Source of the DNA: Fonticula alba ATCC 38817
Taxonomy: Eukaryota; Protista; Nucleariida
Direction: 5' to 3' (one strand)
Assembly (NCBI GenBank): GCA_000388065.2
Contig: KB932205.1
DNA: 17,456 nucleotides
Below the pieces are notes generated by a model. The model searched no databases. It was not told the origin of the DNA and saw only the letters and a program-made list of their open reading frames with translations. Of the stretch, positions 83 to 17,456 are shown piece by piece; position 1 is the stretch's first letter; each line of letters starts with the position of its first letter. The position numbers and the translations under genes were made by a program.

Positions 83-936
83 CCACGCCCGGGACCCCGG
101 CGTCGATGGCCCTCTTCCAGAATGAGGTGGCCATCATGTGGCTGCTGCGCCAGCACCCGAACATCGTCCGGCTGTATGGGTACGGCGACCAGCCGCCGGC
201 CATCGTCATGGAGCGCTACCAGGCGGACCTCGACACGCTGCTGCACTCGGAGGTGCCGCTAGCGGGCCCGGTGCTGCTGGACATCGTCCACCAGTGGGCC
301 ACCGGCCTGGAGGCCATGCATGCCCACGGGGTGGCCCACTGCGACCTGAAGCCGGCCAACATCTTCCTCACCCAGCAGCCGGATGGCGCCTGGCACGCGG
401 CCCTCGGCGACCTGGGCACCTCGCGCAACCTCTCCTCCGACCGGTCCTCCACCCTGACCGTGCCGATGCCCGAGCTGAATGCCCTGACCGGGCGCTATGC
501 CGCGCCGGAGGTGATCGCCGCCTTCCGGCGGGGCATCATCCTCGAGCGCGACCTCTTCCTCCCGGCGGACATCTTCAGCGCGGCCATCATGCTGTGGGAG
601 TGCCTTGGCCGCATGGCCCCCTGGGCGGGTGCGCATTTGTGGCTTGCCTACGCCCCCCCGACTCCCCTGCCGAAGCACACCGACTGACCCCCCGCCACTT
701 GCGCCCCCCTTCCCCCAGGCAACACCCTGGCGGCCATCTTCGAGCAGGTGACCGCCGGGGGTCGGCCGGCCGCCGGCGCGGTGCCCGTCGCCCCGGAGCT
801 GGCCCCGGTGGCGGAGCCCTTGCGCGACCTCCTCACCCTTGCCTGGGCGCAGGACCCCCTCCTGCGCCCCTCGGCCCAGGCCTTCCGCCAGCGGTGCACC
901 ATGTGCCAGGTCACGTCCATGGGTGGCGGCCGGTAG
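83..936 (+). CDS. Gene A: 3' part of a TKL-like Ser/Thr protein kinase (probable receptor kinase, paralog of gene B); exons 83-628 and 719-936, 5' part outside the window
   Basis: Translation shows the alphaC Glu (FQNEV), HCDLKPAN, DLG, YAAPE, DIFS and subdomain XI LRPSA. It is about 72% identical (124/173 aa, hand count, ungapped) to the gene B kinase. Intron 629-718 has GTGCGC...CTGAC(684-688)...CCCCAG, is phase 1 and contains an in-frame TGA. Upstream acceptor CAG at 80-82 has CTGAC at 30-34 and an in-frame TGA at 31-33. Stop TAG at 934-936. Confidence 0.9.
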
Positions 937-1032
937 CCCTGGCGGCCGGTCCGGCACGCCCGCGCTCCGAGCCCGTGCATGGCCCAGTAATGGACTCCCA
1001 GCCTGTCCTCACGGCAGGTGGCCGGGCCCGCG

Positions 1033-1065
1033 GTGTGTGTGTGTGTGTGTGTTTGTGTGTGTGTG
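1033..1065. repeat. (GT)n microsatellite
   Basis: (GT)10-TT-(GT)5-G read directly from the sequence, in the 3' flank of gene A. Confidence 0.95.
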
Positions 1066-1681
1066 CATGCGCGGGGGGCGGGGGGGGGATGCCCTCGAAG
1101 GGGGGGGCTGGGAAAGGGCCGCGAGCCGCGGCTGGCAGCTTGGACCCCAAGTACCGAGGCAAGGGGTCACACAGGCAAGCGGGCGGGCAGACACGCGGGG
1201 GATGCACAAAGAACGGGGCACTCCCAGGGCTCGCGAGCCCCGGACCGCGGGCACCACACGGGGATGCAGGGCCCGACACCGCCGAAGCGCCGCGCGGCCG
1301 GGAAAAGAACGGCCACGCGATGTGACTCGCCCCGGGCCGGCGACCAGCCGCCCAAGGGGAACATGGGCCCCTGTCGAATGGCGCGGTTCTGGTGTACCAG
1401 ACGGCGGGCGAATGGGCCCCGGCCCGGCGCCCCGGCCGGACCCATGAAACCATCGGCCTGCCCCGGGGCCCGGGCCATGGAGCGCCCAGTCCGGCCCCTG
1501 TGTTCTACCTGGGCCGAGGCCCGGAGCCCATGAACGGGTCGCGGCTCCCCCATCCCGCAGGGGGGGGGGGGGCGGGCACGCCGACCAGAGGCCAAAGCAG
1601 GCCCCGGCAGGGGCGCATCATCTTTCGGAGGGCATGTCCGCGTGTGTGTGCGCGCATGGCCCGGGCATCAAATGTTTACCC

Positions 1682-1803: not shown

Positions 1804-1961
1804 CCGACCGGCCGGGCCGCATGCGGGGACTCGCCGGCACCCCTTCCCCGCTAGATCCCCCGCCTCCCTCCCTCCCTCCCTCCCCCCCCCCCGCCCTGCC
1901 CTGCCCTGCCCGGGCCTCCCCTGCCCCGCCGCGCTCGCCGCCTCTCGCCCGCATCCACGCC

Positions 1962-3483
1962 ATGGGCCGCCGGCCCCTCCTCCCGGCGCCCCGGCGGGTC
2001 TGGGCCATCGCCCTGTCGCTGGGCCTCCTGCTGGGCGCACACCTGGCCGGGGCCTGGCTCGACACACTGGGGGCCCGGTTCGGGCCGGGCCGGCCGGCGG
2101 CCGACAGCATGGCCGCCCTGAGCACCCCCCCGCCGGAGGTGCACCTGATGCGCTCGGCCCGGCCGCTGTCGCCCCTCGGCAGGACCCCCTTCCTGGGCAG
2201 CTACCAGACCGGCGCCGAGGCGTGGTACATCCGCCTGCTGTCCAACTACCAGGCGGCGGTCTTCAACCAGGCGCAGGTGTTCTTCTCGCTCTTCGCCGAC
2301 CAGCGAACCGGGTGCACCTTCGGCACGGCGGTCGCCAGTGTGCTTGGCGCGGCCGACATGCCGGGGCCCTTCAACTATCCGATCCTGCCGGTGGCATCGC
2401 CGGGCGCCCTGCCGGCGCTCTTTGCCTTCGACGCCCAGTCGGTGGCCCTGTCCCTGGCCTCCGGGCCGCGGATCCATCGGATTGGCAGCTTCAATTTGCT
2501 GGCGGTGTCGGCCCCGTCGGGCGCCGTGGTGCACATGCTCATCTGGCACCATGGCGATGAGCGGTTCTACGTGGGCCAGCTGGAGGACCGTGGGCTCTTC
2601 CTGTTCCAGGTGAACCTGGATGTGCCCCTGGCGCCGGCCGGGGCCCGCGCCGCCGTCGGCCATGGCAACACCTTCCACCTGTGGAGCGGCGGCTACTACG
2701 CGCGTGTGGTTGTGCCGCCGGTGTCGCCGCCGGCCGGGGCGGCCGTCGGCCTGCTGACTGGCCGGATGCCCGCGGCCGAGGTGGAGGCCACCTCGGCCGG
2801 CGTGCTGGCCGGCGCCGATGGCCCGGGCGGCCCGGGCGGCCCGGGCGGCCAGGCGGCCGGCGCGGCCCTCTTCCACTTTGTGGATGTGGCCTCGACGCGG
2901 CTGGTGGCCGGCAGTCCCGAGGACACGATCGCCCTCCTGGACAACGGGGTGATGTACATCTGCCGCGGCAGCCATCTGGCCAATTGCCCGGCCCCGATGC
3001 AGGTCCCGGTCCCGGTGGCCGACCCGTCCGCCGGGAGGCTGCTCGTGCCGAGCACCCATGAGCTCGGCCACCCGATCAGCTGGCTGGTGCTGCGCGAGTC
3101 GCAGCCCGGCCCCCAGGCCGGGGTCTTCTGGCAGGCCACCCTGCAGCCGGAGACCGGGGCCTTTGCCTTCTGGCTGAAGATGGTGCTCCCGGCCGGTGCC
3201 GAGGCGCCCGCGGCCCTGCGGCCGGTGGCCATGCGCGTCAACGACCTGAACATCGGCCGGTGGGCCCTGGCCGGGGAGTATCTCTACCTGGACGGGCAGT
3301 CCTTCGGCTGCGGGCTGGACCCCACCATCGTCTGCAGCACGCCGGCCGCGCCGATGGTGGAGGCCCCCTCCATCGGGTGGGTGTGCGCCCCCGGCAGGGT
3401 TCTCTCCTTCTTGGCCAACCAGGCGGAGTTGTGTGGTGCCTGCATGGCGGGCTGGCGGCTTTCCGTGTCTCCGAATGGCCAGC
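1962..3483 (+). CDS. Gene B exon 1: signal peptide plus about 480-aa Cys-poor N-terminal domain A, ending in the first half of a Cys-rich repeat
   Basis: Open frame within ORF 1392-3647. ATG context gccATGg. Donor C|GTGCGT at 3484 (phase 1) matches the position and phase of gene C intron 1. Confidence 0.8.
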
Positions 3484-6400
3484 GTGCGTCCCCGCCCCCC
3501 CCCCCCTCGCCTGCTTCGCCGTTGTCGGGTGGCCCTTTGCACGTGCGTGCAAGTGTGGCGATGCATGCGGCCGACGAGCTGACCGTCTCCGCCCTGCCTC
3601 CGTTCTGGACCTGGCTGTCCCTTCTTTGCCTGTGTCCGTGTCTCTGATTCCCTCTGCCCCATCTCTTCCATTCTCTCTTCCATAACCTTCCATTCTCTCT
3701 TCCATTCTCTCTTCCATAACCTTCCATTCTCTCTTCCATTACCTTCAATTCTCTCTTCCATCACCTTCCATTCTCTCTTCCATCACCTTCCATTCTCTCT
3801 TCCATCACCTTCCATTCTCTCTTCCATCACCTTCCATTCTCTNNNNNNNNNNNNNNNNNNNNNNNNNNNNNNNNNNNNNNNNNNNNNNNNNNNNNNNNNN
3901 NNNNNNNNNNNNNNNNNNNNNNNNNNNNNNNNNNNNNNNNNNNNNNNNNNNNNNNNNNNNNNNNNNNNNNNNNNNNNNNNNNNNNNNNNNNNNNNNNNNN
4001 NNNNNNNNNNNNNNNNNNNNNNNNNNNNNNNNNNNNNNNNNNNNNNNNNNNNNNNNNNNNNNNNNNNNNNNNNNNNNNNNNNNNNNNNNNNNNNNNNNNN
4101 NNNNNNNNNNNNNNNNNNNNNNNNNNNNNNNNNNNNNNNNNNNNNNNNNNNNNNNNNNNNNNNNNNNNNNNNNNNNNNNNNNNNNNNNNNNNNNNNNNNN
4201 NNNNNNNNNNNNNNNNNNNNNNNNNNNNNNNNNNNNNNNNNNNNNNNNNNNNNNNNNNNNNNNNNNNNNNNNNNNNNNNNNNNNNNNNNNNNATTCTCTC
4301 TTCCATCACCTTCCATTCTCTCTTCCATCACCTTCCATTCTCTCTTCCATCACCTTCCATTCTCTCTTCCATCACCTTCCATTCTCTCTCCCTTCTCGCC
4401 TCCACATCTCTGCCCCCACCCTTGCCTCCACATCTCTGCCCCCACCCTCGCATCCACTCTCGCTTCTCCCGGACACCCACATCCACGCCCCGGCCCCCAG
4501 GCCAGTGCATCCCCTGCGAGGTGCCCTTCTGCCAGTCGTGCGCCGCCACCGGGTGCCTCGTGTGCGAGGACGGCCACCTGCTCGAGGTTGACCCCCTGAC
4601 CGGGGCCACGGCCTGTGTGACAGCCTGCCGGGAGCACTTCCAGCCGAATGGGTCCATCTGCCAGCCGGACGACCCGGGCCTCGGCATGTCCGGCACCCCG
4701 CGCGTCGAGTTCCGCCAGGTCGCGCTTGCCGGCACGTCGGGCGGGGCCCCGCAGCTCGGGTATCTGGCCGCCACGCGACTGGCCCCGGGGCCGGTGGGCA
4801 TGAGCCACGACCTCCGGGTGCCGGAGGCGCTGGCGGCCGGGCCGGCGCCGCACATGCTGGCCCTGCCGCGGCCCGGGTCGTCCGGCCGTGCCATGTGGCT
4901 CTCCCCGGCGGCCGACGGGTCCGGGGCCCTGGGGTCTGTCCTGCTGCCGGACACGGTCCTCGCAGGCCTCCTGAAGCGGGCCCTGGCCTATGTGGAGTTC
5001 GAGCCCTTCACCCTGCCCAATGGGCTGGCTGCCATCATGGGGGTCCTCTGCACGGATGGCGCCATTGCCATCACGCGCGTCGAGTGCCTCGGCCCGGGCA
5101 GCCCCGGGGAGGGCCTCTGCGCCTCCAGCTCCAGCGTGCATGTTCCCCTGCTCGAGAGGTGCCATGAGCTGCGGCAGTTCGACCGGGCCACCGCCATCAC
5201 CCTCACCCCGGGCGGGCTGCTCATGGTGTCGGCCACGCCCGATGCCCGGCGCGTGGTGCGCATCGACCGGACGCCCGCGCTGCCGGCGCGGTTCCCCGCC
5301 CCGGCCGGCTGGCCGGGGCTCATGGTGCGCCCGCGGCTGGAAGACGACGCCGCCGCCGCCGCCGCCGGCTCGGTGGCCGCCTCGCTGGGCATCGTCGACC
5401 TGGCCCGGCTGGCCGACAGCCGGTATGATGGCCTGAGCTCGGCCGCGTCGCGGCGGCCCCTCGGGTCCCGGCTGCCGGTCTGGCTGCCCACCCCCCGGCG
5501 GGCGGCCCACCCCGGGGGGGAGTTTGTCCTGTCCGGGGTCCGGGCCAGTGACGCCGGGCCGGCCGGCACCGGCGTGTGGGATGTCCAGCACTTTCCCCTG
5601 GGGGCCGTGGCCCATGGCCGGACGATGGACCTGCCCAGCAACCAGCTGGTGCTGGCCCTGCTGCCGGCCGGCCCGCCGGCCGCCTTCCAAATCGCGGCCA
5701 TGGAGCTGGCCGACGCCGAGCGCCCGGCGGCCCTGCTCCTGCTGACCGACCTGTATGTCGGCATGTCGGTCCTGCGCTGCCAGGCCGGCAGCGACCTGTG
5801 CTACCTGCAGCCGGGGCGCCTGTTCGGCCTGCCGGGCGCCATCCATCGGCCGGGCACGCTTGCCGTGTTCCCGGCCCCGGCCGGGCCCCCCGGCGCGCAG
5901 GCCGCCCCCGGCCCGCAGGCCAGCCTGCTGCTGCCGATGGAGGACGCCGGGGCCCTGCAGCTGGATGTCCTGCTGGCCGCCTGCCCCGGGGGCACCTTCG
6001 AGCCCAGCTGCCTGCCCTGCCACGAGCGCTGCCTCACCTGCACCGGGCCCGGGCCGGACCGGTGCGCGCGCTGCCGGCTGGCCATGCGCACCGACTTGCA
6101 CACCTGCCTGGACAGCTGCCCGGCCGGTCTCCAGGCCGATTGGGCGTCCGGCCTGTGCGAGTGCCCGGCCGAGTGCGCGGCCTGCTCGCCGGGCCCGGGC
6201 CAGCCGGCCACCGGGGGCCATGTGTGCACGGCCTGCCGGCCGGGCTTCGCCCTTTCGGCCGGCCACCCCGGCGGGGCCTGTCTCCCCTGCCACGGGGACT
6301 GCGAGCAGTGCTCGGCCCCGGGCGAGCCGGCGGCCTGCACCGTCTGCGCCCCCGGGCGCCTTGCCCACCAGGGGGCCTGTGTGCCGGCCTGCCCGGCCGG

Positions 6401-9400
6401 GCTGTGGCCGGACGCCGGGGCCCGGGTGTGCCGCCCCTGCCCCGGGGCCTGCACCCGGTGCACCTCGGCCACCCAGTGCCAGGCCTGCCTGGAGGGGCAC
6501 TTCCGGCCGGGGGACCTGGCCGAGGCCACCTGCCAGCGGTGCGACCCGTCGTGCGCCCAGTGCGACCGGGCCGACGCCTGCCGGACATGCTGGCGGGGGC
6601 TGGTCTTCCTGAACCCCGACCCGGGGGCCGGGTCGCTCTGCGGGGACACCTGCCCGCCGGGGGAGTTCCCCGGGCCCGGCCGGTGCACCGCGTGCGGCAG
6701 CACCTGCGACCTGTGCGCCGGCGGGCCGGACCGGTGCCAGGTGTGCGCCCCGGGGCACCGGTGGCAGGCTGGCCCGCCGGCGGCCGGTGACACGGCCGCC
6801 TGTGTGCCCTGCCCGGCCGGGTGCGCCTCCTGCTCGGCCGACGGCCGGTGCATGGCCTGCGCCGGGGGGCTGGTCCTCACGGCGGCCGGTGGCTGCGCGG
6901 AGGCCTGCCCGGCCGGGCACTTTGCCGACGCCGGCGAGTCCTGCCAGCCGTGCGACCCGAGCTGCGCCGCCTGCTCCGGGCCCGGGCCCGGGCACTGTAC
7001 CGGCTGCGCCCCGGGGCTGGACATGGTCGCCGAGGCTGCCGGCCTGTTCTCCTGCGCGTCCGGCTGCCCGGCGGGCCGGTACCGGGACACGGTGTCCGGC
7101 TCCTGCGAGGCGTGCGACCCGGCCTGCGCCGCCTGCAACGGCCCCTCGGACCGGGACTGCTGGCGGTGCACCGGCGGCCTGCTGCAAGATGGCGCCTCTG
7201 TGCAGCAGTGCGCCGGGCGCCATGTTGCCACCTCCGGCCGGTGCCTCCCCTGCCACGCGTCGTGCGCTGCCTGCGCCGGGACCCGGAGCACCGACTGCGT
7301 CGGCTGCCTGGCCGGGCTGCTTCCCCTGCCGGCCGGGGCCAGCCCCATGCGCTGTGTTCCCGGCTGCCCGGTGGGGTACCGGACTTCCGGGGCCGGCTGC
7401 GCGTCGTGCGGCGGCCACTGTGCCTCCTGCTCGGCCGCCGCGTGCTCCCTTTGCGACCGGGGCTGGCTCCTCGGCGGGCCCGGCTCCCCGGACCCCTGCG
7501 TGCAAACCTGCCCCCCGGGCTCCATGCCCTCGGGCAGCTCGTGCAACGGCTGCCACGGCACCTGCATGATGTGCTTCGGCCCGGCGGCCGACCAGTGCCT
7601 GTCCTGCCGGGCCGAGGCCCCGGTCTTGCTCAATGGCGCCTGCTTGGCTGCCTGCCCGGGCGGGACCTTCGAGTCTGGGCCGACCTGCCTGCCCTGCCAT
7701 GCGACGTGCGGCGCCTGCACCGGCCCCACGCGGCACGACTGCACGGCCTGCCCGGAGGGGCGGCTCCTGCTGGGGACCGAGTGCGTGGCCAGCTGCCCGG
7801 CCGGGCACTACGCCACCGCGGCCGGGGTGTGCACCCCCTGCCATGTGTCCTGTGGCAGCTGCTCCGGGCCCTCGGCCGCCGAGTGCACCGGGTGCGCCCC
7901 TCCGGGCCTCCTGCACCGGGGCGCCTGCGTCGCCTCCTGCCCGGGGGGGCTTCTCGCCTGCCAGCCGACCGGCGCCTGCGAGGCCTGCCCGGCCGGGTGC
8001 GCCTCCTGCGTCGCGACCACAGGCTCGGCCTCCGGCTGTCTGTCCAGCTGCACCGCCTGCGAGACGGGCTTCGCGCTGCTGCCCTCGACCGGCCGGTGCG
8101 TGGACGGCTGCCCGGAGGGCCAGTTCTCCGACGGTGCGGTGTGCCGGGCCTGCGACCCGGAGTGCGGGACCTGCTCCGGGCCGGCGACCTTCTGCACGTC
8201 GTGCGACCGGGGCTTCCTGCGGGTGGACCTCGGCGAGTGTGTGTCCGCCTGCCCGGCGGAGGGCTTCGCCCCGGCGCCAGCACCCAGCCCGGTGTGTCTG
8301 GCCTGCGGGCCGGGGTGCCGGCGGTGTGCGGCCGGCCCGGGGCAGGGCGCGTGCGAGCGCACCGGCGACGGCCGGGTGCAGTGCCCGGCGGCCGAGCGGT
8401 GCGAACTGTGCGCGCACGATCGGCTGCTGCATGGGGCCGGGTGCGTGGGCGAGTGCCCGGACGGGCTCTTCGCCGACTGGGAGGCCGCCACTCCGGGCTG
8501 TCGGCCCTGCCATGCTGGCTGCTCTGCGTGCGTCGGGCCTGAGAAGGCCGACTGCATCGACAGCCCGTCGCCCAGGGAGGCTCTCGGTGCGCACCAATAC
8601 CCTTCTAGACGCTTGGGACATGTTCGGATTTTCTGACCCCCCCCCCCTTCGACCTGCGCTGCCAGCCCTTGGCCTGGGCGTCGGGCTAGGCCTGCTCGCG
8701 CTTTTGCTCCTGGTGCTGGCTATGGTGGTGCTCTGCCTGCGCCTTCGCCGCACTCGCCAGGGCGCCCGGAAGCCGGTACGCTTTGGCTCTCCTTTCGGCC
8801 ATCCCAAACGTGCATCCCCATCACTGACGCCCCTTCCCCCGGCCTTTGCGAAGCCCCCTGATGACGCAGGTGCGCCTCCTTTTCCCTCGATATCTCATCC
8901 CGCCCCCCTCCCCCCCCCTCGCCTGGCGACTGACCCCGCTCGTCCTTCCCGCTGACAGACGCCACCGTGCTCAACACCATGGTCGAGCTGTCGCTCCCCG
9001 GGAGCATCCTGGTGAGCATCACGAATGACTTCGCCCCGCTGGACGAGCAGCTGGGCGCCGGGACCCAGGCGTCGGTCTACGCGGCACACGCCGTCGGGGC
9101 CGGCATCTCCGACCGGCTGGGCTGCCCGGCCACGGTGGCCATCAAGCAGCTGCGGGCCGAGCGGCTGAAGCCCACGCAGGTGGTCCTCTTCCAGAATGAG
9201 GTGGCCCTGATGTGGCTGCTGCGCGACGCGCCGAACGTCGTCCGGCTGTACGGCTACAGCGACCAGCCGCCGGCCATCGTGATGGAGCGCTTCGATACGG
9301 ACCTGGCCACGCTGTTGCACTCGGAGGTGCCGCTTGGGCAGGCGGCCCTGCTGGACATCTGCCAGCAGTGGGCCTCCGGGTTGGAGGCCATGCACGCGCA

Positions 9401-9967
9401 GGGGATCGCCCATTGCGACCTGAAGCCGGGCAATGTGTTTGTGAGCCGGCGCCCGGATGGCTCCTGGACGGCGGCCCTCGGGGACCTGGGCACCTCGCGC
9501 AACCTCCACACCGACCGGTCGTCCACCCTGGTGACCGAGCCGCCGGAGCTGAACGCCATGACCGCGCGGTACGCCGCGCCCGAAGTGCTGTCGGCCTTCC
9601 AGCGCCGGCGCCCGCTGGACCGGGACCTCTACATGCCGGCGGACATCTACAGCGCGACCATCATGCTGTGGGAGTGCCTCACCCGGACCGTCCCCTGGGA
9701 CGGTGCGCCCCCCTCTTGTCGCGCCCTCCCCGACCCCTCGCGCTTGGACTGACCGACTGAGACACCGCCATTCCCCCAGGCATGGACTTTGAGCGGATTT
9801 CGGCCGGGGTGCTGGCCGGCGCCCGGCCGGACGCAGCCGCCGCCGCCGCCCCCGGGCCGCTGGCCGATCTGCTGCCGCTGGGGTGGGACTCGAACCCGCC
9901 GAGCCGGCCGCTGGCCGCCTCCTTCCGGCAAAAGTGCGCCATGGCCGCCGCAACGCTCCTCCACTGA
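1962..9967 (+). CDS. Gene B: giant type I transmembrane receptor kinase (signal peptide, two uncharacterised domains, furin-like Cys-rich repeats, TM, TKL-like non-RD kinase); join(1962-3483,4501-8586,8666-8775,8854-8869,8959-9702,9780-9967), 6666 nt, 2221 aa
   Basis: All five introns have GTGCGY/GTACGC donors and AG acceptors with compatible phases, and the total length is divisible by 3. The N-terminus is MGRRPLLPAPRRVWAIALSLGLLLGAHLAGA (signal-peptide-like). TM is ALGLGVGLGLLALLLLVLAMVVLCL followed by RLRRTR. Kinase motifs are LGAGTQASVY, VAIK, QNEV, HCDLKPGN, DLG, YAAPE, DIYS and SRP. The start codon choice and microexon are predictions, and further exons hidden in the N gap cannot be excluded. 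Confidence 0.85.
3662..4389. repeat. 22-bp minisatellite (TTCCATCACC-TTCCATTCTCTC)n in intron 1 of gene B, spanning an assembly gap
   Basis: The unit is read directly on both sides of the N run. Diverged units (TTCCATAACC, TTCCATTACC, TTCAATTCTCTC) occur at the 5' edge. The + strand of the array contains no G. True length is unknown. Confidence 0.95.
3843..4292. other. Assembly gap (450 N)
   Basis: Run of N flanked on both sides by the same minisatellite, consistent with an unresolved repeat array. Confidence 1.
4398..4449. repeat. 26-bp tandem duplication GCCTCCACATCTCTGCCCCCACCCT(T/C) x2
   Basis: Two copies, 4398-4423 and 4424-4449, with one mismatch, near the 3' end of intron 1 of gene B. 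Confidence 0.9.
4501..8586 (+). CDS. Gene B exon 2 (4086 nt): short Cys-rich module, about 440-aa Cys-poor domain B, then about 18 furin-like Cys-rich repeats (5982-8555)
   Basis: Acceptor CCCCCAG at 4500, donor G|GTGCGC at 8587. Repeats of the form CPxGxF/YxxxxxxC-xxC-xxxC-xxC-xGxxxxxC-xxC-xxGxxLxxxxC match the furin-like/growth-factor-receptor Cys-rich pattern. Confidence 0.9.
8666..8775 (+). CDS. Gene B exon 3: transmembrane helix plus basic stop-transfer segment
   Basis: Intron 8587-8665 (79 nt, CTGAC at 8633-8637, GCCAG acceptor). Encodes ALGLGVGLGLLALLLLVLAMVVLCLRLRRTRQGARKP. Donor GTACGC at 8776, phase 0. Confidence 0.9.
8854..8869 (+). CDS. Gene B exon 4: predicted 16-nt juxtamembrane microexon (PPDDA+G)
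   Basis: Needed to bridge the phase-0 donor at 8776 to the phase-1 acceptor at 8958. It has upstream CTGAC (8824-8828), a pyrimidine tract and an AAG acceptor at 8851-8853, and a downstream donor CAG|GTGCGC at 8870. Confidence 0.7.
8959..9967 (+). CDS. Gene B exons 5-6 (8959-9702, 9780-9967): TKL-like Ser/Thr kinase domain
   Basis: All core kinase motifs are present. Intron 9703-9779 (77 nt, GTGCGC...CTGAC...CCCCAG) interrupts W-x-G at the same position and phase as intron 629-718 of gene A. Stop TGA at 9965-9967. Confidence 0.92.
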
Positions 9968-10454
9968 TCCCGCCTGCCCGTCCTGCTCGTGTCCAATGGC
10001 ACATGTGGCCTTGCTTGGTGCACTCCGGAGGCTTGAGCCCATTTGAGGAGCATGCTCCGGCCCCCTCCCGAGAGAAATACATTGGTGGAATCTCACTGTG
10101 CAGGGGCTGCCCAAGGTGTGGGGCCGGCGGCAGCCGCACGTGCACACATGCATTGCTATTGTGTTGGCCGCATGGTCCCATTGATCTGTTGGCATCGTCT
10201 CTCTCTGGTGCCTTGTGACCTGTCATGTGACACCAGCGCGCCAACGCTTGGGCCGCTCGGTCGGCTGCACACGCATGGCCGGGATATTCCGGCCGATTAT
10301 TTATTTCCCCCTTGCGGGACAAATGCCTGCATCGCGCCGAGTCCTACGCCAGGCGGCCCCCTGGCCGAGGTGTGTGTCGTTGTGTTTCACCCAGCCCCAG
10401 GGGCCCCGCGTCTGGGAGACTTTCCACTGGATAATCACCTGGGCGTGAGGAGGG

Positions 10455-11051: not shown

Positions 11052-11088
11052 GAGGGCAATCTCCGGGCCAAGTGCGGGCCTGGTTGGC

Positions 11089-11105
11089 GGGGGGGGGGGG
11101 GGGGG
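11089..11105. repeat. G17 homopolymer upstream of gene C
   Basis: Read directly from the sequence. Shorter G and C runs occur in the other intergenic and intronic regions. Confidence 0.9.
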
Positions 11106-11422
11106 CACCCGGTGCCGGCTGTCTAGACCTTTTGGTCGGGAAGGCAGGGGGACGGTGCACGGTCTGGAACTTGGTCCAGAAGCCCGATTTCCGGACCGGG
11201 GCTTTTATCCGGGCCGCCGGCCCCAGGCCGACAAGGGGCCCCTGCCGGGCGTCCTCGCCTCTAAATGCCACACTGCCCCCTCCCCTCGGCACCCCGGCAG
11301 GGTTCTCTTCCACCACCCCTTCTCGTCTCCTCCCCCCCCCTCTCTCTCTCTCCCCCCCGCCCATTTGCCTCCCCGCCTTCGTCCGCTCCCTCCTCCGCGC
11401 TGGGTCCCGAACCCCACCCACA

Positions 11423-14400
11423 ATGCCTGGCGTCCGAGGCGCCGGTCCGGATCGGCGATCGACCGGCCCTCTGTGGCGGATCTGGCCGCGCCCGATGGCG
11501 GCCGTGCTCATGGCGGTGCTGCTGTGGCTGCCCCTCCTCCCGGATGGCGCCATGGCCAGCTTGCCGCTTTTCTACCAGAAGGCGCTCTTGCCGCTGGCGA
11601 AGCCCGAGTTAGGTCTGGCCTTCCGCCATTTGCACCTGCTGGGCACGACGCTGGCGGTGAAGCAGCGCGCGGATCTCCGCGTGGACTACTACTCCCAAGA
11701 CTCCCAGGACCTGGTGAATGTGGCGCAACATCGCCTGGGGCCGGTGGCCAACCGTTTCCCCGCCGGGACGGTCGGCCTGGAGCACATGCCTGCCGTGCCC
11801 CCGGGCGACATCTATCTAATGCCCTCCCTGAGTGGGCCCTTCGGCATGGTGGCGGTCCAGTCGCCCAGCATCAATGTGATCATCGGCGCCGCTGTCAATG
11901 CCTTCATGGTGGGCGACGTGAGGACCGTGCTCGGGTCGCTGATTCTGGGCGGCCAAGAGGCATCTCTGCTGCTCCAGGCCGCTGACCTGAGCGTCTTCAT
12001 CTTGACTGTGGACGGTGACTTATCTCGCAAAATGCCCGTGGCTTTGGCCCCCGGCCAGTCATCCATGCCGCCCAGCCTGGCCATGGGTGTTGGCCCGGCT
12101 TTCCACCTGCTGTACAATGGCGTCCACCTGGAAACCCACATGAACACACTGGCGACCGGCGTGAATCCCCTCGGCCTTGCGGAGGACGTTGTGCACATGG
12201 CCACCGGGCGCCTGCTGACCGCCGCGTCCGCCCGGGAGGACATGATCTTCCTCCTTTCCAGCGGCCGCATTCTCGTTTGCCTTGACCGAGCCTTCTCGGA
12301 AGCGTCGTGCGCGCAGGTGCTCGACATTCCCCCGGTGCCGGGGCTCACCGTGCAGTCGGCGATGCGGATTTTGATCCCCGGCTCCTTGACCGACACTGCC
12401 TTGCATCGGCACTTCTTCTTGCACTGCCCGGTCCAGAAGCGGCTTTTTCGCTTCGAATTCCTCCCGGCCACGGGCCTGGCTTCCAACGTGCCCCGCGAGA
12501 TCCTCATCCCGCAAGAGGCATGGGACATGGGCCTGAGCATGATACGGGTCCGCCATTCGCCCGGCGGCAGTGCCTGGCACCTGGCCGCCAAGCATCTGTA
12601 CTTTCCGCCGGAGGCCTTTGGCTGCCCGCCGGGCGATGATTCGACCGTCGCCTGTGCCGATGGCCTCCTGCAGGCGTCCGGCGGCTGGGGGTGCGCCACC
12701 GGCCGCGACTATTCGCCCCTGTTCAACGCCGCGTACATGTGCTATGGCTGCCAGGGTGGCAGGCAGTTCATCCCGTCCGCCAGCGGGCCAGGTACGCCGA
12801 GCCGGGGTTTTCTTCCGCCCGAGGGTGCCCGGGGCCGCTGTGGAAGCGGGGCCTTGCCTTGGCTCGGTGAGCCGGCATCGGTTGCTGGGCCCGGGTGTCC
12901 GGCTGCCGGGGCTCTTTGGTTGTTGTTCTCTTCTTCGCGCATTTCTCACCCCCGCTCTGTGTGCGCTGTTCTCCCGATGGTCGGGCCTCCGGGCCGGGCC
13001 TCTGCTCGGGCCCCGGCCGTCTGCCCTCGCGTGTGCGCGCGTGCGCGCGTGCCTCCGGGCTAGGCATCTGCCAGGAGTGCCCGGTCGAGCATTGTGCCGC
13101 GTGCATGGGCAGCACATGCCTCGTCTGTGAGGGTGGCCTGCACCTCCAGCGGGACTGGCGCACGGGGCAAACTTCCTGCCAGCCAACATGCTCCATGGGC
13201 CTCTCGAGGCATGGGACCATGTGCCTCCCGCCGGCCGTGCTCTCGGCCCCGGCGGTGGCCTTGAATAGGATGGCCCTCAAGCTGCCGGTCAATTCCGGGC
13301 GCGTGGTCACCGTCACGCCCACCCGTCTGGACCTGCGGTCCAACAACCAGCTGTTCATCCGGTCGGCCCCCCCGACGCCGGCCGACCCCGGGGCCCTGCT
13401 CATCGGCGACAGCCTTGGCGACCTCTTTTGGGCCATGCCGGACCTGTCGAATGGCGGCTGGCTCGTTCGGCAGGTGCAAACAGGCCAGTCCTTGGCCGGG
13501 GTCAAGACGTCCCTCCTGGAGGTGGGTCCCTTTGACCCCACCCCGGGCGGGCTGAATGGCAGCTGGCCGGTCTACATGCTGGCCTTCTGCCGTGCGGACC
13601 GGGTGGCCAGCATCGTGCGGGTGGCCTGCCAGCCGGACGCCGAGCCTCCCCCGGGCCCGGGGCTTCCGCCGAGCGCCTGCCCCCCGACATTCATCGAGAT
13701 CTGGCACAGCACCATGACCCAGGGATGCGGCATTCGCTCCATGGCGGCCGACGCCCTGACCCTCCTGGATGAGGACGCCACCCTGCCCGCGCCGCAGGGC
13801 CAAGCCATGGCCATTTGGCTGGATGACACCGGCATCGCCCGGGTGCAGACCCTCTCCTCGCAGACATCGGTCGGCATGCATCCGGTCCTCTTCCCGGCCT
13901 CGGGGGGTGTCCTCATGGCCGGCGGCGCCAGGACGCTGTATCAGCCGGCGCCCCGGCTGTACCTCGTGCCGGTGCCCCTGTCGGCCAATGACCCCCGGGC
14001 TGAGGCTCTCATCGAGGCGTGGTCCGGCGCCGGGTCCTTTGTCGAGCCGCTGTCCCTGCCGACCGGGCGCGCCTCGTGGCCCTTCGAGACGGTGGCCAGC
14101 ATCCTCCAGTTGGGGGCCGGCCCGGTGTGGGATGCCCTCCACTGGCCGCTGGGCACGCTGCCCCATGAGCGGCTCATCGGCCTGCCAGCCCTGAAGGTCC
14201 ACCTTGCCACGCTGGAGGGCGGCTCCTATGGCAATGGGCATCGACTGGGTGTCGTCCCGCTGGCGGGGCTGGACTACCCCAGCGCCCTGGTGCTGGTGAC
14301 CCAGCGCCATGTCCTGGTCTCCCTCCTCCGGTGCTGGGACCACCATCTTTCCGGCTTCCCCTTCTGCCACTTGCTGCCGGCCACCAGCCTGCAGGTGGAC

Positions 14401-17270
14401 CTGATCGAGGACCTGCGGGACATTCGCATCGTCCACCTGCCCATGGCCCGGGCTTCGGGCGACCCGCCCGGTCAGGTGCATCTGCTGCTCAGCTGGGGCG
14501 CCAGCACGCCGGTCGGCCTCTCGCTGACGCCCCCCGAGCCGGGCTGCCCCCCGGGGACATTCCCTCCCAATTGCCTGCCCTGCTGGCCGAGCTGCCCCGG
14601 GTGTACCGGCCCCGGGCTGGCAGATTGCCAGGCCTGCGACCTCCAAATGCCGGATGGCACCTGTGTTCAGGAATGCCCCCCGGGGCTGGTTGACAGCGGC
14701 CTCGGGGCCTGTGCCTGCCCGGCCTTGTGCGTCGCCTGCTCGCCCGACACGCTGGGCGGGCCCTTTTGGTGCCGGGAATGCCAGGCGGGCCATGCCCTGG
14801 ACAGCCTGAATCCCAATTCCTGCCTGCCATGCCACCCCTCCTGCGAGTCGTGCGCCGTCCCGAATGACCCGGCTGCTTGTCATGCCTGCCCGGCGGCGAA
14901 GTGGCTGAAGGACCACACCTGCGTCGATGATTGCCCCACTTCATTCTGGCCCAACCCGGCCTCTCGCGCCTGCGAGCCATGCCCGGCGAGCTGCGCCACC
15001 TGTGCGTCGGCCGACCGCTGCACCGCCTGCCCGGCACGGGCCTACCTCGGCTCGGATGACCAGTGCCACCACTGCGACGGGTCCTGCGCCTCGTGCGAGG
15101 ACGGGCTCTCCTGCGGGGCCTGCCGCTCGGGGCTGGTCTTCCTGCAGACCGACCCGCTGATCGCGTCGACCTGTGCGTCGACCTGCCCGCCGGGGGAGTT
15201 CGTCGGCGCCGGCCGGTGCACCGTGTGCGGCAGCACCTGCGACCTGTGCGCCGGCGGGCCGGACCGTTGCGAGGTGTGCGCGCCTGGTCACCGGTGGCAG
15301 ACTGGCCCGCCGGCGGCCGGCGGCACGGCCGCCTGTGTGCCATGCCCGCCCGGGTGCGAGTCGTGCGCCGGGGAGCTGTGTTTGTCCTGCGGCCCGGGGC
15401 TGTTCCTCACGCCGACCGGCACCTGCGCGGCATCCTGCCCGGGCGGACGCCATGCGGACGACGAGGTCGGCAGCTGCCAGCCGTGCGACGTCAGCTGCGA
15501 CGAGTGCGCCGGGCCCGCCGGCGACCAGTGCACCGAGTGCGCCCCGGGGCTGGACATGGTCGCCGAGGCTGACGGCCTGTTCTCCTGCGCGTCCGGCTGC
15601 CCGGAGGGCCGGTACCGGGACACGGTGTCCGGCTCCTGCGAGGCGTGCGACCCGGCCTGCGCCACCTGCAACGGCCCCTCGGACCGGGACTGCTGGCGGT
15701 GCACCGGCGGCCTGCTGCAAGACGGCCACTCCGTGCAGCAGTGCGCCGCCAACCATGCCCCCACCGCCGGCCGGTGCCTCCCCTGCCACGCGTCGTGCGC
15801 TGCCTGCGCCGGGACCCGGAGCACCGACTGCGTCGGCTGCCTGGCCGGGCTGCTTCCCCTGCCGGCCGGGGCCAGCCCGACGCGCTGTGTTCCCGGCTGC
15901 CCGGTGGGCTACACCGCGGGGCCCGGCGGCTGCACGCCGTGCGGCGTCCACTGCTCCAGCTGCCCTGGCGATGCGGCGACGTGCGCGCTGTGCGACCGCG
16001 GGTGGCTGCTGTCCGGGCCGGCCTGCCAGGACTCCTGCCCGGAGGCCTCCGCGCCGCAGGGGGGCCTGTGCAAGGTGTGCCACGCGACCTGTGCCACCTG
16101 CTTTGGGCCGGAGCCGGAGCACTGCCTCACGTGCCAGCCGCCGGCCCGGCTGCTGCTCGACGGCCGGTGCTACGCCTCCTGCCCGGGCGGGACCTTCGAG
16201 TCTGGGCCGACCTGCCTGCCCTGCCATGCGACGTGCGGCGCCTGCACCGGCCCCACGGGGCACGAGTGCACGGCCTGCCCGGAGGGGCGGCTCCTGCGCG
16301 GTGGCGAGTGCCTGACCGCGTGCCCGACCGGCGAGTATGCCGATATGGACCGCGTGTGTCGGCCCTGCGACGCCCCGTGCCGGACGTGCCTCGGCCCGGG
16401 GGCGTGCTCCTCGTGCGCCGGCGAGCAGGTGCTGCACGAGGACCAGTGCATTGGGGCCTGCCCCGAGCGGACGTATGTCTGCTCGGTGACCGGCCGCTGC
16501 CGGGCCTGCCCGGCCGGGTGCGCGGCCTGCATGGCGGGCCCCCCCTCGTCGGGGGCCGAATGCACGGCCACCTGCACGGAGTGCGACGCTGGCCGGGCGC
16601 TGTCCCCTGCCGGCGGCCGGTGCGTCGAAGTCTGCCCGGCGGGGGAGCATCTGGACGGGTCTGTCTGCCGGGCCTGCCATGCCGACTGCCGGACTTGCTT
16701 CGGCCGGGCCAGCGCCTGCACCAGCTGCCACGCGGGCGTGCTGCACCCGGCCAACGGGGCCTGCGTCGGGGCCTGCCCGGCGGCCGGCTTCGTCGAGGTG
16801 GACTTCTCGGCCTCGGTCGTGGCCCCGGGCCCGGAGCGGGTGTGCCTCTCCTGCTCGAGCGGCTGCCTCCAGTGCGTGGCCAGCCCAACGGCCCCGGCAT
16901 GCGGCCTCGCGCCGGACGGTGCGCTCGTGTGCCCGACCTCGGCCAGCATCTGCACTTTTTGCCAGGGGGACCTGCTGCTGGTGGCCGGTCGGGCCGAGTG
17001 TGTGGCGGCCTGCCCGCCGGTGGGGTTTTTCGCCGACTGGCATGCCCCAGCACCAGCCTGCCTTCCCTGCCACCCGGCCTGCGCTTCCTGCCTCGGGCCC
17101 GGCCCGGGCGACTGCACCGATGCAGGCGGCCCGGCCGGGCGGCGACTCGGTACGTGCTGCCCCATGTGCGGCTCCTGCGCGCCCCCCCCCCCCCCTGGTT
17201 TTGTCCCCGACCACCCGACTGACGGGGCCGTGTCCCTGTGCAGCCCTTGGCCTCGGCATCGGTCTGGGCA

Positions 17271-17302
<32 letters not shown>

Positions 17303-17350
17303 TTGTTCCTGTACTTGCGCCTTCGCCACCGGCGGCGTGTCTCGACCAAG
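11423..17350 (+). CDS. Gene C (3' incomplete): paralogous giant receptor ectodomain plus TM; join(11423-12791,13064-17149,17244-17350,...), kinase expected beyond the window
   Basis: The frame runs from ATG 11423 (or 11495) through signal-like MAAVLMAVLLWLPLLPDGAMA. Introns 12792-13063 (GTACGC...CTAG, phase 1), 17150-17243 (GTACGT...CTGAC...GCAG, phase 1) and 17351 onward (GTGCGT, CTGAC near 17409, no AG before the window ends) match the gene B positions and phases. Furin-like repeats span 14545-17115. TM is ALGLGIGLGMLLLLLLLLLVLFLYL followed by RLRHRRR. The kinase is inferred from paralogy only. Confidence 0.85.
17273..17299 (+). repeat. (CTG)9 trinucleotide repeat encoding the poly-Leu core of the gene C TM helix
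   Basis: Nine uninterrupted CTG codons in the spliced frame of exon 17244-17350. Confidence 0.9.
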
Positions 17351-17456
17351 GTGCGTGTCCTACATGGTCTTCCCTTTGCCGTGCCCGCGCGCCGGGCCGG
17401 GCCGATCGCTGACATCTCCGCACGCACGCCCCTGCGCCCGGGGCGCCCGGGGGGGG

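What the first reader, a model, noticed from the sequence alone, without database searches (positions are those of the whole stretch)
83..17350. Tandem array of giant receptor kinases with divergent sensor ends, a homogenised stalk and conserved non-RD kinases: candidate protist recognition system
Seen: three head-to-tail paralogs share intron positions. The two kinases are about 72% identical, parts of the Cys-rich stalk are 98-100% identical at nucleotide level, but the N-terminal domains align only at short motifs. Established: tandem clustering, diversified ectodomain tips and non-RD kinases typify plant pattern-recognition receptor kinases (XA21, FLS2, EFR), and polymorphic tandem surface receptors mediate kin recognition in Dictyostelium (TgrB1/TgrC1). 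Inference: this is an independently evolved family of variable receptors for prey/pathogen sensing or self/non-self discrimination in a unicellular eukaryote, with the roughly 860-aa repeat stalk acting as a spacer. I cannot tell from sequence alone whether it has been described.
Basis: partly seen in the sequence, partly recalled or inferred. Interest (0 to 1): 0.8.

Follow-up and report, generated by a model that had tools for sequence, protein, structure and literature searches.

The report
Fonticula double-propeller receptor kinase array
The window holds three neighbouring members of a family of at least 80 giant cell-surface receptor kinases found only in the social amoeba Fonticula alba (a sister of fungi). 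Each has its own ancient pair of beta-propeller sensor heads on a stalk and kinase that gene conversion keeps alike, and no paper found describes the family.

Summary
The window is Fonticula alba scaffold KB932205. It carries the kinase end of one gene, a complete 2221-aa gene, and a third gene up to its membrane-spanning exon, all head to tail with shared phase-1 introns. The N gap lies in a 22-bp minisatellite inside a conserved intron, and no coding sequence is missing.

Each protein has a signal peptide, beta-propeller A with a Cys knot, one Cys module, beta-propeller B, about 17 furin-like CxxC modules, a TM helix and a TKL-type Ser/Thr kinase.

The family has at least 81 gene models in tandem arrays; every one whose source was shown (58) is Fonticula. 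No two heads exceed 56% identity. Kinases reach 90% identity and stalk patches reach 99.6% at nucleotide level.

Synonymous sites are saturated in the heads but not in the mid-stalk or the kinases. So the heads are old, and the chassis is homogenised by gene conversion, even between scaffolds.

Catalytic residues are intact. The catalytic loop reads HCD, HGD or HRD in 23, 4 and 12 of 39 kinases.

A sensing or recognition role is plausible but untested. Positive selection, polymorphism and expression could not be examined. I rate it a new variant of a known kind, of moderately high interest.

The parts
83..630 (+). Gene 0 (P0005, KCV69797, annotated 'TKL protein kinase'): main kinase exon, C-lobe half. 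HCD catalytic loop with the Cys codon TGC at 340-342. The upstream part of the gene lies beyond the assembly gap that bounds the window.
   Evidence: Exact translation mapping; Pfam Pkinase 1.3e-24; codon.
721..936 (+). Gene 0 last exon (kinase C-terminal tail) and stop codon. Splice junctions are good to +/-2 nt.
1033..1065 (.). (GT)n microsatellite in the gene 0 - gene 1 intergenic region (937-1961).
1962..3485 (+). Gene 1 (P0001, 2221 aa, 'TKL protein kinase') exon 1. It holds a putative signal peptide (aa 1-30) and beta-propeller A with its C-terminal Cys knot (aa 31-508). A gene-specific GPGGPGG insertion is encoded by a 9-bp repeat at 2820-2868.
   Evidence: AlphaFold2 pLDDT 86.3, pTM 0.85. 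Foldseek gives seven-bladed propellers. No Pfam or PDB sequence match. Repeat.
3486..4502 (+). Gene 1 intron 1 (phase 1, GT..AG, junctions +/-2 nt). It contains a 22-bp minisatellite (3699-3842 and 4293-4389), the 450-N assembly gap (3843-4292) and a 26-bp repeat (4395-4461).
   Evidence: The homologous intron is gap-free in genes 0 and 2 and in P0041, P0042 and P0007.
4503..4658 (+). Gene 1: single furin-like CxxC module linking the two propellers (aa 509-560).
4659..5978 (+). Gene 1: beta-propeller B (aa 561-1000).
   Evidence: AlphaFold2 pLDDT 83.5, pTM 0.85. Foldseek matches EED, DDB1-BPB and clathrin propellers. No detectable homology to propeller A (hhalign probability 0.9%).
5979..8585 (+). 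Gene 1: Cys-rich stalk (aa 1001-1869). It has 17 furin-like modules of about 48 aa, 139 Cys and 52 CxxC.
   Evidence: Pfam VSP 3.5e-12 and GF_recep_IV 1.1e-8.
7005..7345 (+). Gene-conversion tracts in the gene 1 stalk: 7005-7193 (97.9%) and 7228-7345 (99.2%), identical in register to gene 2 15538-15878. The same stretch is 97-98% identical to gene 0.
   Evidence: Synonymous mismatch is 0.31-0.38 of expectation in aa 1201-1500.
7651..7770 (+). Further conversion tract, 98.3% identical to gene 2 16178-16297.
8665..8775 (+). Gene 1 TM exon: a 25-residue hydrophobic helix followed by RLRRTRQGARK, giving type I topology.
8854..8868 (+). Annotated 5-codon micro-exon (PPDDA). It is frame-neutral and absent from the model of paralogue P0041, so it is unverified.
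8958..9704 (+). Gene 1 kinase main exon. It carries the Gly loop GAGTQASV, VAIK, HCDLKPGN (Cys codon TGC at 9414-9416), DLG and APE.
   Evidence: Pfam Pkinase 5.1e-29. Best PDB matches are B-Raf, Raf-1 and TAK1 at about 1e-14..
9782..9967 (+). Gene 1 last exon and stop codon.
11423..12793 (+). Gene 2 (first part of model P0029, H696_03244) exon 1: signal peptide and beta-propeller A (aa 1-457).
12794..13065 (+). Gene 2 intron 1. It is phase 1, homologous to the gapped intron of gene 1, and has no gap.
13066..17148 (+). Gene 2 exon 2: Cys linker module, beta-propeller B (about 13216-14559) and the Cys-rich stalk (about 14560-17148). The stalk holds the conversion tracts 15209-15320, 15475-15728, 15761-15878 and 16178-16297.
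17243..17350 (+). Gene 2 TM exon. The kinase exons that should follow are lost in the assembly gap that begins right after the window.

Best explanation
The window is a piece of a tandem array of type I transmembrane receptor Ser/Thr kinases (TKL group). They belong to a family of at least 81 gene models that is restricted, as far as the databases show, to Fonticula alba.

Shown: each member has two unrelated seven-bladed beta-propellers at the membrane-distal end, a disulphide-rich stalk of about 17 furin-like modules, one TM helix, and a cytoplasmic kinase with all catalytic residues intact.

Shown: every member has its own anciently diverged pair of propellers. The middle of the stalk and the kinase are kept similar among paralogues by gene conversion, both within the array and between scaffolds.

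Inferred mechanism: the propellers bind extracellular ligands and each receptor has a different specificity. The rigid stalk holds them far above the membrane. Ligand-driven clustering switches on the kinase. Because the chassis is homogenised, many different inputs feed one common downstream pathway. The likeliest inputs are surface molecules of bacteria (prey or harmful) or of other Fonticula cells during collective feeding and aggregation.
For: - Organism and annotation.
- Gene models, shared introns, and the gap lying in an intron.
- Domains: Pfam Pkinase, VSP and GF_recep_IV. AlphaFold2 models with pLDDT 86 and 84 and pTM 0.85. Foldseek finds generic seven-bladed propellers.
- Family size and restriction. 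phmmer of the heads against 1.84 billion representatives gives 61 hits. A kinase search gives 45 Fonticula proteins, then a drop to 29% identity. Of the 81 models, 75 have a propeller and 54 at least part of a kinase.
- Tandem arrays.
- Kinases are probably active. In 39 domains K, E and the APE Glu are invariant, and the catalytic D, N and DxG-Asp are each present in 38 of 39. dN/dS is about 0.3-0.45.
- Heads are old and all different. The closest pairs are 56% and 49% identical. The synonymous mismatch ratio is 0.8-1.1.
- The chassis is homogenised. Tracts reach 97.9-99.6%. The synonymous ratio is 0.31-0.38 in the mid-stalk and 0.33 for the gene 1 kinase against P0007 on another scaffold. 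The gene 1 kinase is 86-87% identical to those kinases but only 63% to its neighbour gene 0.
Against: - No ligand, localisation, kinase activity or expression data exist.
- Signal peptide and topology are read by eye from the sequence.
- Positive selection on the heads cannot be assessed, because dS is saturated.
- Only one strain is sequenced, so polymorphism is unknown.
- Many gene models are broken or fused at assembly gaps. Counts are therefore approximate and young near-identical copies could be collapsed.
- 23 of the 81 models were not checked for source organism.
- The low synonymous divergence could in principle owe a little to codon bias. GC3 is alike across domains, however, and the expectation was computed per domain.
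Confidence: 0.62

Rival explanations
1. It is an allorecognition or kin-discrimination system of an aggregative amoeba. In this reading the heads are polymorphic between strains and mediate self/non-self sorting during sorocarp formation, as TgrB1/TgrC1 do in Dictyostelium.
For: The organism is aggregative (known biology; PMC4299406). The family is a large surface receptor family with very diverse heads in tandem arrays.
Against: - The diversity seen is between ancient paralogues, not alleles.
- There is no paired, divergently transcribed ligand-receptor gene arrangement; the genes lie head to tail.
- There are no TIG/IPT domains.
- More than 70 receptors is far more than a matching system needs.
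- Polymorphism cannot be tested with one strain.
Confidence: 0.1
2. The proteins are phagocytic or adhesion receptors for prey capture, like Entamoeba PATMK and the other TMKs. The ectodomain would mainly stick to bacterial surfaces and the kinase would trigger engulfment, rather than discriminate among many ligands.
For: The overall plan is the same as in the Entamoeba transmembrane kinases: a CxxC-rich ectodomain, a TM helix and a kinase, in a large family in a phagotrophic amoeba (Pfam VSP hit; PMC2211552; PMC2880585). Fonticula is bacterivorous.
Against: - Seventy-odd different double-propeller heads, each preserved for a long time, suggest many specific ligands rather than generic adhesion.
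- No sequence link to Entamoeba TMKs appeared in any search.
- This rival overlaps with the best explanation and differs mainly in emphasis.
Confidence: 0.2
3. It is a variant surface coat or antigenic-variation family like the Giardia VSPs. The Cys-rich ectodomain would be the functional part, one or a few members would be expressed at a time, and the kinase would be incidental or inactive.
For: The Pfam VSP model scores above its cut-off on the stalk (46.3 bits against 31.4). There are many paralogues, and gene conversion occurs among them.
Against: - The kinase catalytic residues are invariant or nearly so in 39 members and are under purifying selection.
- Conversion homogenises the stalk rather than diversifying it.
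- Fonticula is free-living, with no host immune pressure.
- The variable part is the propellers, not the CxxC region.
Confidence: 0.04
4. The near-identical stalk patches and the array itself are assembly or annotation artefacts, that is, collapsed or chimeric repeats in a gap-rich draft.
For: The window is bounded by gaps and interrupted by one. Two of the three gene models jump gaps, and model P0029 fuses two genes. One 99.6% tract lies 280 bp from a gap.
Against: - The tracts are in frame and collinear. They are flanked by about 77% identical sequence on both sides and are 97.9-99.6% rather than 100% identical.
- The same gradient of synonymous divergence is seen in an independent array on another scaffold.
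- The heads are all distinct.
Confidence: 0.04

Closest known systems
Entamoeba histolytica transmembrane kinases (TMKs, e.g. PATMK, EhTMKB1-9)
   Same: Both are type I receptor kinases of a phagotrophic amoeba. Both have a signal peptide, a CxxC-rich ectodomain of the Giardia VSP or furin-like kind, one TM helix and a cytoplasmic kinase. Both form a large multigene family with many truncated or partial copies (PMC2211552, PMC2880585; Pfam VSP hit).
   Different: - No sequence relationship was detected.
- The Fonticula proteins are about twice as long and carry two N-terminal beta-propellers, which TMKs are not described as having.
- They come from a different supergroup: Holomycota against Amoebozoa.
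- Fonticula heads are all below 56% identical, whereas the EhTMKB1 copies are at least 95% identical.
Plant non-RD LRR receptor kinases that act as pattern-recognition receptors (XA21, FLS2, EFR)
   Same: Both are surface receptor Ser/Thr kinases in tandem arrays within large lineage-specific expansions. In both, the catalytic-loop Arg is replaced by Cys or Gly. Here it is HCD in both kinases of the window and non-RD in 27 of 39 in the family. The link between non-RD kinases and innate immunity is described in PMC8463890 and PMC10943584.
   Different: - The ectodomain is propellers plus furin-like repeats, not LRRs.
- The kinase scores best with Raf and TAK1, not with IRAK/Pelle-type kinases.
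- A third of the family is RD, and the state flips repeatedly.
- No immune function has been shown.
Sema-PSI receptors (MET/RON receptor kinases, plexins)
   Same: The layout is alike: a membrane-distal seven-bladed beta-propeller, then a small Cys-knot, then a repeat stalk, a TM helix and a signalling domain. RON Sema-PSI appears among the fold matches of propeller A (rank 27).
   Different: - The fold match is generic (TM about 0.3), and WD40-type propellers score better.
- There is no Pfam Sema or PSI match.
- There are two propellers instead of one.
- The stalk is furin-like modules, not IPT domains.
- The kinase is of the Ser/Thr type. Fonticula is reported to have no tyrosine kinases (PMC4342544).
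EGFR / insulin-receptor type receptors and holozoan RTK radiations
   Same: Both have furin-like Cys-rich modules (Pfam GF_recep_IV hit) in the ectodomain of a single-pass receptor kinase. Both show lineage-specific radiations with different ectodomains on a conserved kinase.
   Different: There are no L domains. The kinase is not a tyrosine kinase. The stalk is much longer (17 modules).
Dictyostelium TgrB1/TgrC1 allorecognition pair
   Same: Both are surface proteins of an aggregative amoeba encoded in clustered paralogous genes.
   Different: - Tgr proteins have IPT/TIG ectodomains and no kinase (from my own knowledge, not checked here).
- Tgr genes work as a polymorphic, adjacent ligand-receptor pair (also from my own knowledge).
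- Here there are no TIG domains, the arrays are head to tail, and there are no polymorphism data.

Membership tests
Eukaryotic protein kinase, TKL group, Ser/Thr type | Protein kinase fold with the Gly loop, VAIK Lys, alphaC Glu, HxDxKxxN, DxG and APE motifs | tested here: met
   Pfam Pkinase 5.1e-29. All motifs are present in genes 0 and 1 and nearly invariant in 39 family kinases. DLKPxN is the Ser/Thr-type loop.
Eukaryotic protein kinase, TKL group, Ser/Thr type | Closest characterised kinases belong to the TKL group (Raf, MLK/TAK1) | tested here: met
   The best PDB matches are B-Raf, Raf-1 and TAK1, at only about 1e-14, so this is a divergent member. NCBI names it a TKL protein kinase.
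Plant RLK/Pelle pattern-recognition receptor kinases (XA21, FLS2, EFR) | Kinase domain of the IRAK/Pelle/RLK clade | tested here: not met
   The top 60 PDB matches are Raf and TAK1. No plant RLK or IRAK is among them.
Plant RLK/Pelle pattern-recognition receptor kinases (XA21, FLS2, EFR) | Leucine-rich-repeat ectodomain | tested here: not met
   There is no LRR hit. The ectodomain is two beta-propellers plus furin-like modules.
Plant RLK/Pelle pattern-recognition receptor kinases (XA21, FLS2, EFR) | Non-RD catalytic loop (Cys or Gly in place of Arg) | tested here: met
   HCD in genes 0 and 1. Family-wide the residue is C 23, G 4 and R 12 of 39, so it is a majority trait and not a fixed one.
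Entamoeba transmembrane kinases (TMK) | Signal peptide, CxxC-rich ectodomain, single TM helix and cytoplasmic kinase | tested here: met
   52 CxxC in the stalk, Pfam VSP 3.5e-12, a TM helix and a kinase. The TMK plan is described in PMC2211552.
Entamoeba transmembrane kinases (TMK) | Sequence homology to the TMK families | tested here: inconclusive
   No Entamoeba protein appeared in the head search or the kinase search. The latter considered only proteins of 1221-3887 aa that share exact words. No direct comparison was made.
Sema-domain receptors (MET/RON, plexins) | Sema-type seven-bladed propeller followed by a PSI knot | tested here: inconclusive
   Propeller A is a seven-bladed propeller followed by a Cys knot with five invariant or near-invariant Cys. 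RON Sema-PSI is only rank 27, with TM 0.31. There is no Pfam Sema or PSI hit.
Sema-domain receptors (MET/RON, plexins) | Tyrosine kinase or plexin GAP cytoplasmic domain | tested here: not met
   The catalytic loop is of the Ser/Thr type. Fonticula is reported to lack tyrosine kinases (PMC4342544).
Dictyostelium TgrB1/TgrC1 allorecognition proteins | IPT/TIG-repeat ectodomain, no kinase | tested here: not met
   There are no TIG hits and a kinase is present.
Dictyostelium TgrB1/TgrC1 allorecognition proteins | High polymorphism between wild strains | not testable with these tools
   Only one Fonticula alba assembly is available (GCA_000388065.2).
Giardia variant-specific surface proteins | CxxC-rich ectodomain | tested here: met
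   Pfam VSP scores 46.3 bits against a cut-off of 31.4, over a 45-residue stretch only.
Giardia variant-specific surface proteins | TM helix followed by a very short conserved cytoplasmic tail | tested here: not met
   The TM helix is followed by a ~330-residue cytoplasmic region with a kinase.

The most novel reading that the evidence does not exclude
Fonticula alba, the amoeboid sister lineage of fungi, has convergently built a repertoire like that of plant pattern-recognition receptors. More than 70 long-preserved double-propeller specificities sit on one mostly non-RD (HCD/HGD) receptor kinase chassis, which concerted evolution keeps uniform. The amoeba would use this repertoire to tell bacteria apart (food against foe) or to recognise partners during collective feeding and aggregation. 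That would make it another independent receptor kinase radiation tied to multicellular behaviour, after plants, animals and brown algae.
Probability: 0.25. Interest if true: 0.8.

Novelty: new variant of a known kind. Interest (0 to 1): 0.58.

Why it matters
Large receptor kinase radiations have been linked to the origin of multicellularity in plants, animals and brown algae (summarised in PMC4299406). The published kinase survey of Fonticula reported only that it has no tyrosine kinases (PMC4342544).

A family of at least 80 giant receptor Ser/Thr kinases would make up roughly 1% of the gene models, going by EukProt gene numbers that reach about 6,170. It would give an aggregative relative of fungi a rich surface-sensing system of its own.

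Three features make it worth study:
- The heads are two sequence-orphan beta-propellers.
- The catalytic loop is mostly non-RD, as in innate-immune receptor kinases of plants and animals.
- The heads are ancient, yet the stalk and kinase evolve in concert, even across scaffolds. This is a clean natural example of modular concerted evolution.

It also offers concrete candidates for how Fonticula senses bacteria and each other.

Tried and rejected
- Propellers A and B as duplicates of one another: rejected. hhalign gives probability 0.9%.
- Known domain families for the heads: none found. Pfam on 52 and 34 members gave nothing. Profile searches against PDB sequences gave nothing. Only fold-level, generic propeller matches appeared.
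- dN/dS on the heads as a test of diversifying selection: uninformative. Synonymous sites are saturated (pS about 0.5 at GC3 about 0.93). A search for closer head pairs found none above 56%.
- Head-to-tail shuffling as the cause of the decoupling between head and kinase identity: not demonstrated. The propeller-A data do not reject the kinase-tree clade (AU p = 0.29), although pairwise identities are uncorrelated (Spearman -0.09). Gene conversion of the chassis explains the data without shuffling.
- Homogenisation among repeats within one gene: rejected. Modules of gene 1 are only 34% alike in the median, 52% at most. Conversion is between positional homologues of different genes.
- Conserved intergenic or promoter elements between array members: only low-complexity matches.
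- tRNA genes and Rfam families in the window: none.
- Literature on this family: searches pairing Fonticula with receptor kinase, kinome, TKL, receptor-like kinase, transcriptome and aggregation, and receptor tyrosine kinase found no description.
- The first word-indexed protein searches found only 1 and 4 relatives, because of the word prefilter. The exhaustive phmmer search was needed.

Full report
**Identity of the sequence.** The longest forward ORF (4422-8633) matches at 99% identity a 2221-aa protein named 'TKL protein kinase [Fonticula alba]' (P0001). The gene lies on scaffold KB932205.1 of assembly GCA_000388065.2. The window equals positions 8040-25495 of locus L001, which I fetched around it. 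Runs of N bound the window on both sides and one lies inside it. G+C is 72-80% in coding parts, GC3 is about 0.93, and G+C falls to 56-60% in the gene 1 - gene 2 spacer. Fonticula alba is a bacterivorous amoeba that aggregates to form sorocarps, and it is a sister lineage of fungi (PMC4299406, PMC4342544).

**The gap.** The 450 N at 3843-4292 lie in a 22-bp minisatellite. The same unit continues on both sides: 3699-3842 (6.5 copies) and 4293-4389 (4.4 copies).
- The annotated protein splices from about 3484 to about 4501. The junctions are a GTGCGT donor and a CCCCAG acceptor, and the intron is phase 1.
- In the exon-1 frame a stop follows at 3645-3647, before the gap.
- Genes 0 and 2 have a phase-1 intron at the homologous codon with no gap. 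So do three paralogues on another scaffold.
- The number of residues between the conserved cysteines on either side of the junction is 15, 15 and 12 in genes 1, 2 and 0.
- The gap is therefore intronic and hides no coding sequence.

**The observation.** Three genes lie head to tail on the + strand.
- Gene 0 (P0005) contributes only its last two kinase exons, about 83-630 and 721-936.
- Gene 1 is complete. Its exons are 1962-3485, 4503-8585, 8665-8775, a 5-codon micro-exon at 8854-8868, 8958-9704 and 9782-9964.
- Gene 2 runs from 11423 (exons 11423-12793 and 13066-17148) to its TM exon at 17243-17350.
- The intron between head A and the first Cys module, the introns around the TM exon, and the intron after PW[AD]G in the kinase all fall at homologous positions.
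- The two kinases are 70% identical over the main exon (125/178).
- The heads are 20-34% identical. The stalk is about 60% identical on average, with 50-residue windows at 94-100%.
- At nucleotide level the stalks are about 77% identical overall. They contain in-register tracts of 112-254 bp at 93.8-99.6%.
The corrections are that the array is longer and that the kinase of gene 2 is lost in the next gap.

**Annotation problems.** The model for gene 2 (P0029, H696_03244, 2723 aa, 'hypothetical protein') is a fusion. After the TM exon it jumps the gap that follows the window. It continues in a fourth paralogue, which has the remnant of a propeller A, a short Cys stalk and a TM helix, with no kinase in the model. 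The model for gene 0 jumps another gap, from mid-stalk to the kinase C-lobe. P0008, the model with the neighbouring accession upstream of gene 0, is also a family member. The local array therefore has at least five members.

**Anatomy.** The plan of gene 1 is as follows.
- A hydrophobic N-terminus, read as a putative signal peptide.
- Domain A (aa 31-508).
- One CxxC module (509-560).
- Domain B (561-1000).
- A stalk of 869 aa with 139 Cys in 17 modules of about 48 aa.
- A 25-residue TM helix followed by basic residues.
- A kinase.

Pfam recognises only the kinase and, in the stalk, the Giardia VSP and growth-factor-receptor domain IV models. Family alignments of domains A and B gave confident AlphaFold2 models: pLDDT 86.3 and 83.5, pTM 0.85 for both. 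Both are all-beta. Foldseek matches them to many seven-bladed propellers (WD40 proteins, DDB1 BPB, EED, clathrin terminal domain) at E about 1e-6 and TM 0.4-0.58. RON Sema-PSI is at rank 27 for domain A.

Neither domain matches any Pfam family or any PDB sequence profile. The two domains are not detectably related to each other. Domain A ends in a knot with five invariant or near-invariant cysteines.

**The kinase.** It has every catalytic motif and a Ser/Thr-type loop (HCDLKPGN). It scores best, but weakly, with B-Raf, Raf-1 and TAK1. This agrees with the TKL label and with the report that Fonticula has no tyrosine kinases (PMC4342544).

**The family.**
- An exhaustive phmmer search with the two heads against 1.84 billion representative proteins found 61 proteins, 58 of them below 1e-10.
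- A kinase search added 20 more. It showed a sharp drop after the 45 Fonticula proteins, to a 29%-identical metagenomic protein with a different architecture.
- Every one of the 58 proteins whose source was displayed is from Fonticula alba.
- Of the 81 models, 75 carry propeller A and/or B, and 54 carry at least part of a kinase.
- Accession and gene numbers place them in clusters. At least eight lie among about 18 consecutive models on KB932205, which is the array of the window. More than a dozen lie on the 619-kb scaffold KB932210. Smaller groups lie elsewhere.
- Locus L002 shows three more complete members head to tail.

**Is non-RD a hallmark?** In 39 near-complete kinases, K, the alphaC Glu and the APE Glu are invariant. 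The catalytic Asp, the Asn and the DxG Asp are each present in 38 of 39. The residue between His and Asp is C in 23, G in 4 and R in 12. On a tree of 21 kinases the state needs at least 7 changes. The Cys codon is TGC, one CpG transition from CGC. Non-RD is thus the majority state, with the same substitutions as in plant immune receptor kinases (PMC10943584, PMC8463890). It is labile, however, not conserved.

**How the pattern of divergent heads and a conserved chassis arose.** Across 210 pairs, propeller A identity has a median of 21.6% and a maximum of 40.9%. Kinase identity has a median of 60% and a maximum of 90.5%. The two are uncorrelated. Among all 73 A and 64 B propellers the closest pairs are 56% and 49% identical.

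I compared synonymous codon choice at positions where two paralogues have the same amino acid. I set this against the mismatch expected if codons were drawn independently from each gene's own usage in that domain.

| Region and comparison | Observed / expected mismatch |
|---|---|
| Propellers and first part of the stalk | 0.8-1.1 (fully randomised) |
| Stalk residues 1201-1500, among genes 0, 1 and 2 | 0.31-0.38 |
| Kinase, gene 1 vs P0007 (other scaffold) | 0.33 |
| Kinase, gene 1 vs neighbour gene 0 | 0.74 |

Nei-Gojobori dS tells the same story: about 0.8-1.1 in the heads, 0.21-0.24 in the mid-stalk and 0.14-0.18 for the closest kinases. GC3 is similar in all domains.

So parts of one and the same gene pair have very different ages. 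The heads are ancient. The mid-stalk and the kinase have been exchanged recently, including between scaffolds. Conversion acts between positional homologues of different genes, not among the repeats of one gene, which are only 34% alike. The propeller-A tree is star-like, with terminal branches of about 1.35 substitutions per site against 0.3 for the kinase. It does not reject the kinase-tree grouping (AU p = 0.29). There is therefore no need to invoke shuffling of heads. Whether the heads ever evolved under positive selection cannot be told from these data.

**Interpretation.**
- Shown: a very large, lineage-restricted family of single-pass receptor kinases, with a unique double-propeller head per member and a catalytically intact kinase.
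- Inferred: the heads are ligand-binding modules of different specificity. The stalk is a rigid spacer. Clustering activates the kinase. Homogenisation of the chassis keeps all receptors coupled to one pathway.
- Given the biology of the organism, the ligands are most likely bacterial surface molecules or molecules of other Fonticula cells.
- The narrower readings cannot be separated with the tools at hand. These are allorecognition of the Tgr kind, phagocytic receptors of the PATMK kind, and a VSP-like coat. They are listed as rivals with my estimates.

**Comparison with what is known.** The nearest analogue in plan and life-style is the Entamoeba transmembrane kinase family (PMC2211552, PMC2880585), but no sequence link was found and those proteins lack the propellers. 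The resemblance to plant non-RD receptor kinases is convergent: the kinase clade and the ectodomain both differ. The order propeller, knot, stalk, kinase recalls MET/RON, but only at the level of a generic fold.

The genes are in GenBank as 'TKL protein kinase', 'serine/threonine protein kinase' or 'hypothetical protein'. I found no paper that describes the family. I therefore rate it a new variant of a known kind, namely lineage-specific receptor kinase radiations with Cys-rich ectodomains. Its head architecture and mode of evolution are unusual.

**Limits.**
- The assembly is a gap-rich draft, so counts are approximate and young duplicates could be collapsed.
- There is one strain and there are no expression data.
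- The signal peptide and topology are read from the sequence.
- 23 of the 81 models were not checked for source.
- The micro-exon is unverified.

Noticed in passing
window 17243-17456 and L001 25496-28006: The annotated gene 2 model (P0029, H696_03244, 2723 aa) is a fusion across an assembly gap. After the TM exon it continues into a fourth downstream paralogue, which has a propeller-A remnant, a short Cys stalk and a TM helix, with no kinase in the model. The kinase of gene 2 itself is missing in the gap.
   Followed up: partly
L001 6920-8039, just upstream of window position 1: The gene 0 model (P0005) skips an assembly gap from mid-stalk to the kinase C-lobe. It therefore lacks the rest of the stalk, the TM helix and the kinase N-lobe. 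P0008, the model with the neighbouring accession upstream, is a further family member, so the local array has at least five genes.
   Followed up: partly
window 8958-9704 compared with L002 (KB932210.1): The kinase of gene 1 is 86-87% identical to kinases on a different scaffold (P0007, P0002), with low synonymous divergence. It is only 63-70% identical to the kinase of its immediate neighbour gene 0. This points to gene conversion or exchange between loci.
   Followed up: yes
window 2820-2868: A 9-bp tandem repeat (GGCCCGGGC) encodes a GPGGPGGPGG insertion in a loop of propeller A. The insertion is unique to gene 1 (alignment occupancy 0.03) and is modelled with low confidence.
   Followed up: partly
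window 3699-4461: Intron 1 of gene 1 is filled with a 22-bp CT-rich minisatellite, which holds the gap, followed by a 26-bp repeat. The homologous introns of genes 0 and 2 are short (222 and 272 bp) and lack these repeats.
   Followed up: yes
window 8854-8868: A 5-codon micro-exon (PPDDA) sits in the annotated model between the TM exon and the kinase exon. It does not change the frame, and paralogue P0041 has no counterpart. It needs RNA evidence.
   Followed up: no
window 9968-11422: The gene 1 - gene 2 spacer drops to about 60% G+C (56% at 10001-11000), against 72-80% in coding parts. The spacers of different array members share only low-complexity matches, so conversion is confined to coding sequence.
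   Followed up: partly
window 4350-8807 (- strand) and other long ORFs on both strands: Very long antisense and off-frame ORFs, up to 1485 aa, appear throughout. I read them as a by-product of the extreme G+C content, which makes stop codons scarce, and not as genes. I did not test them further.
   Followed up: no
P0004, P0002, P0009, P0014 (other scaffolds): Some family models are unusual. P0004 has a degenerate kinase (HGDLSPAN, and GHLG in place of DLG). P0002, P0009 and P0014 contain two complete ectodomain units each, most likely because neighbouring array members were fused in annotation.
   Followed up: no
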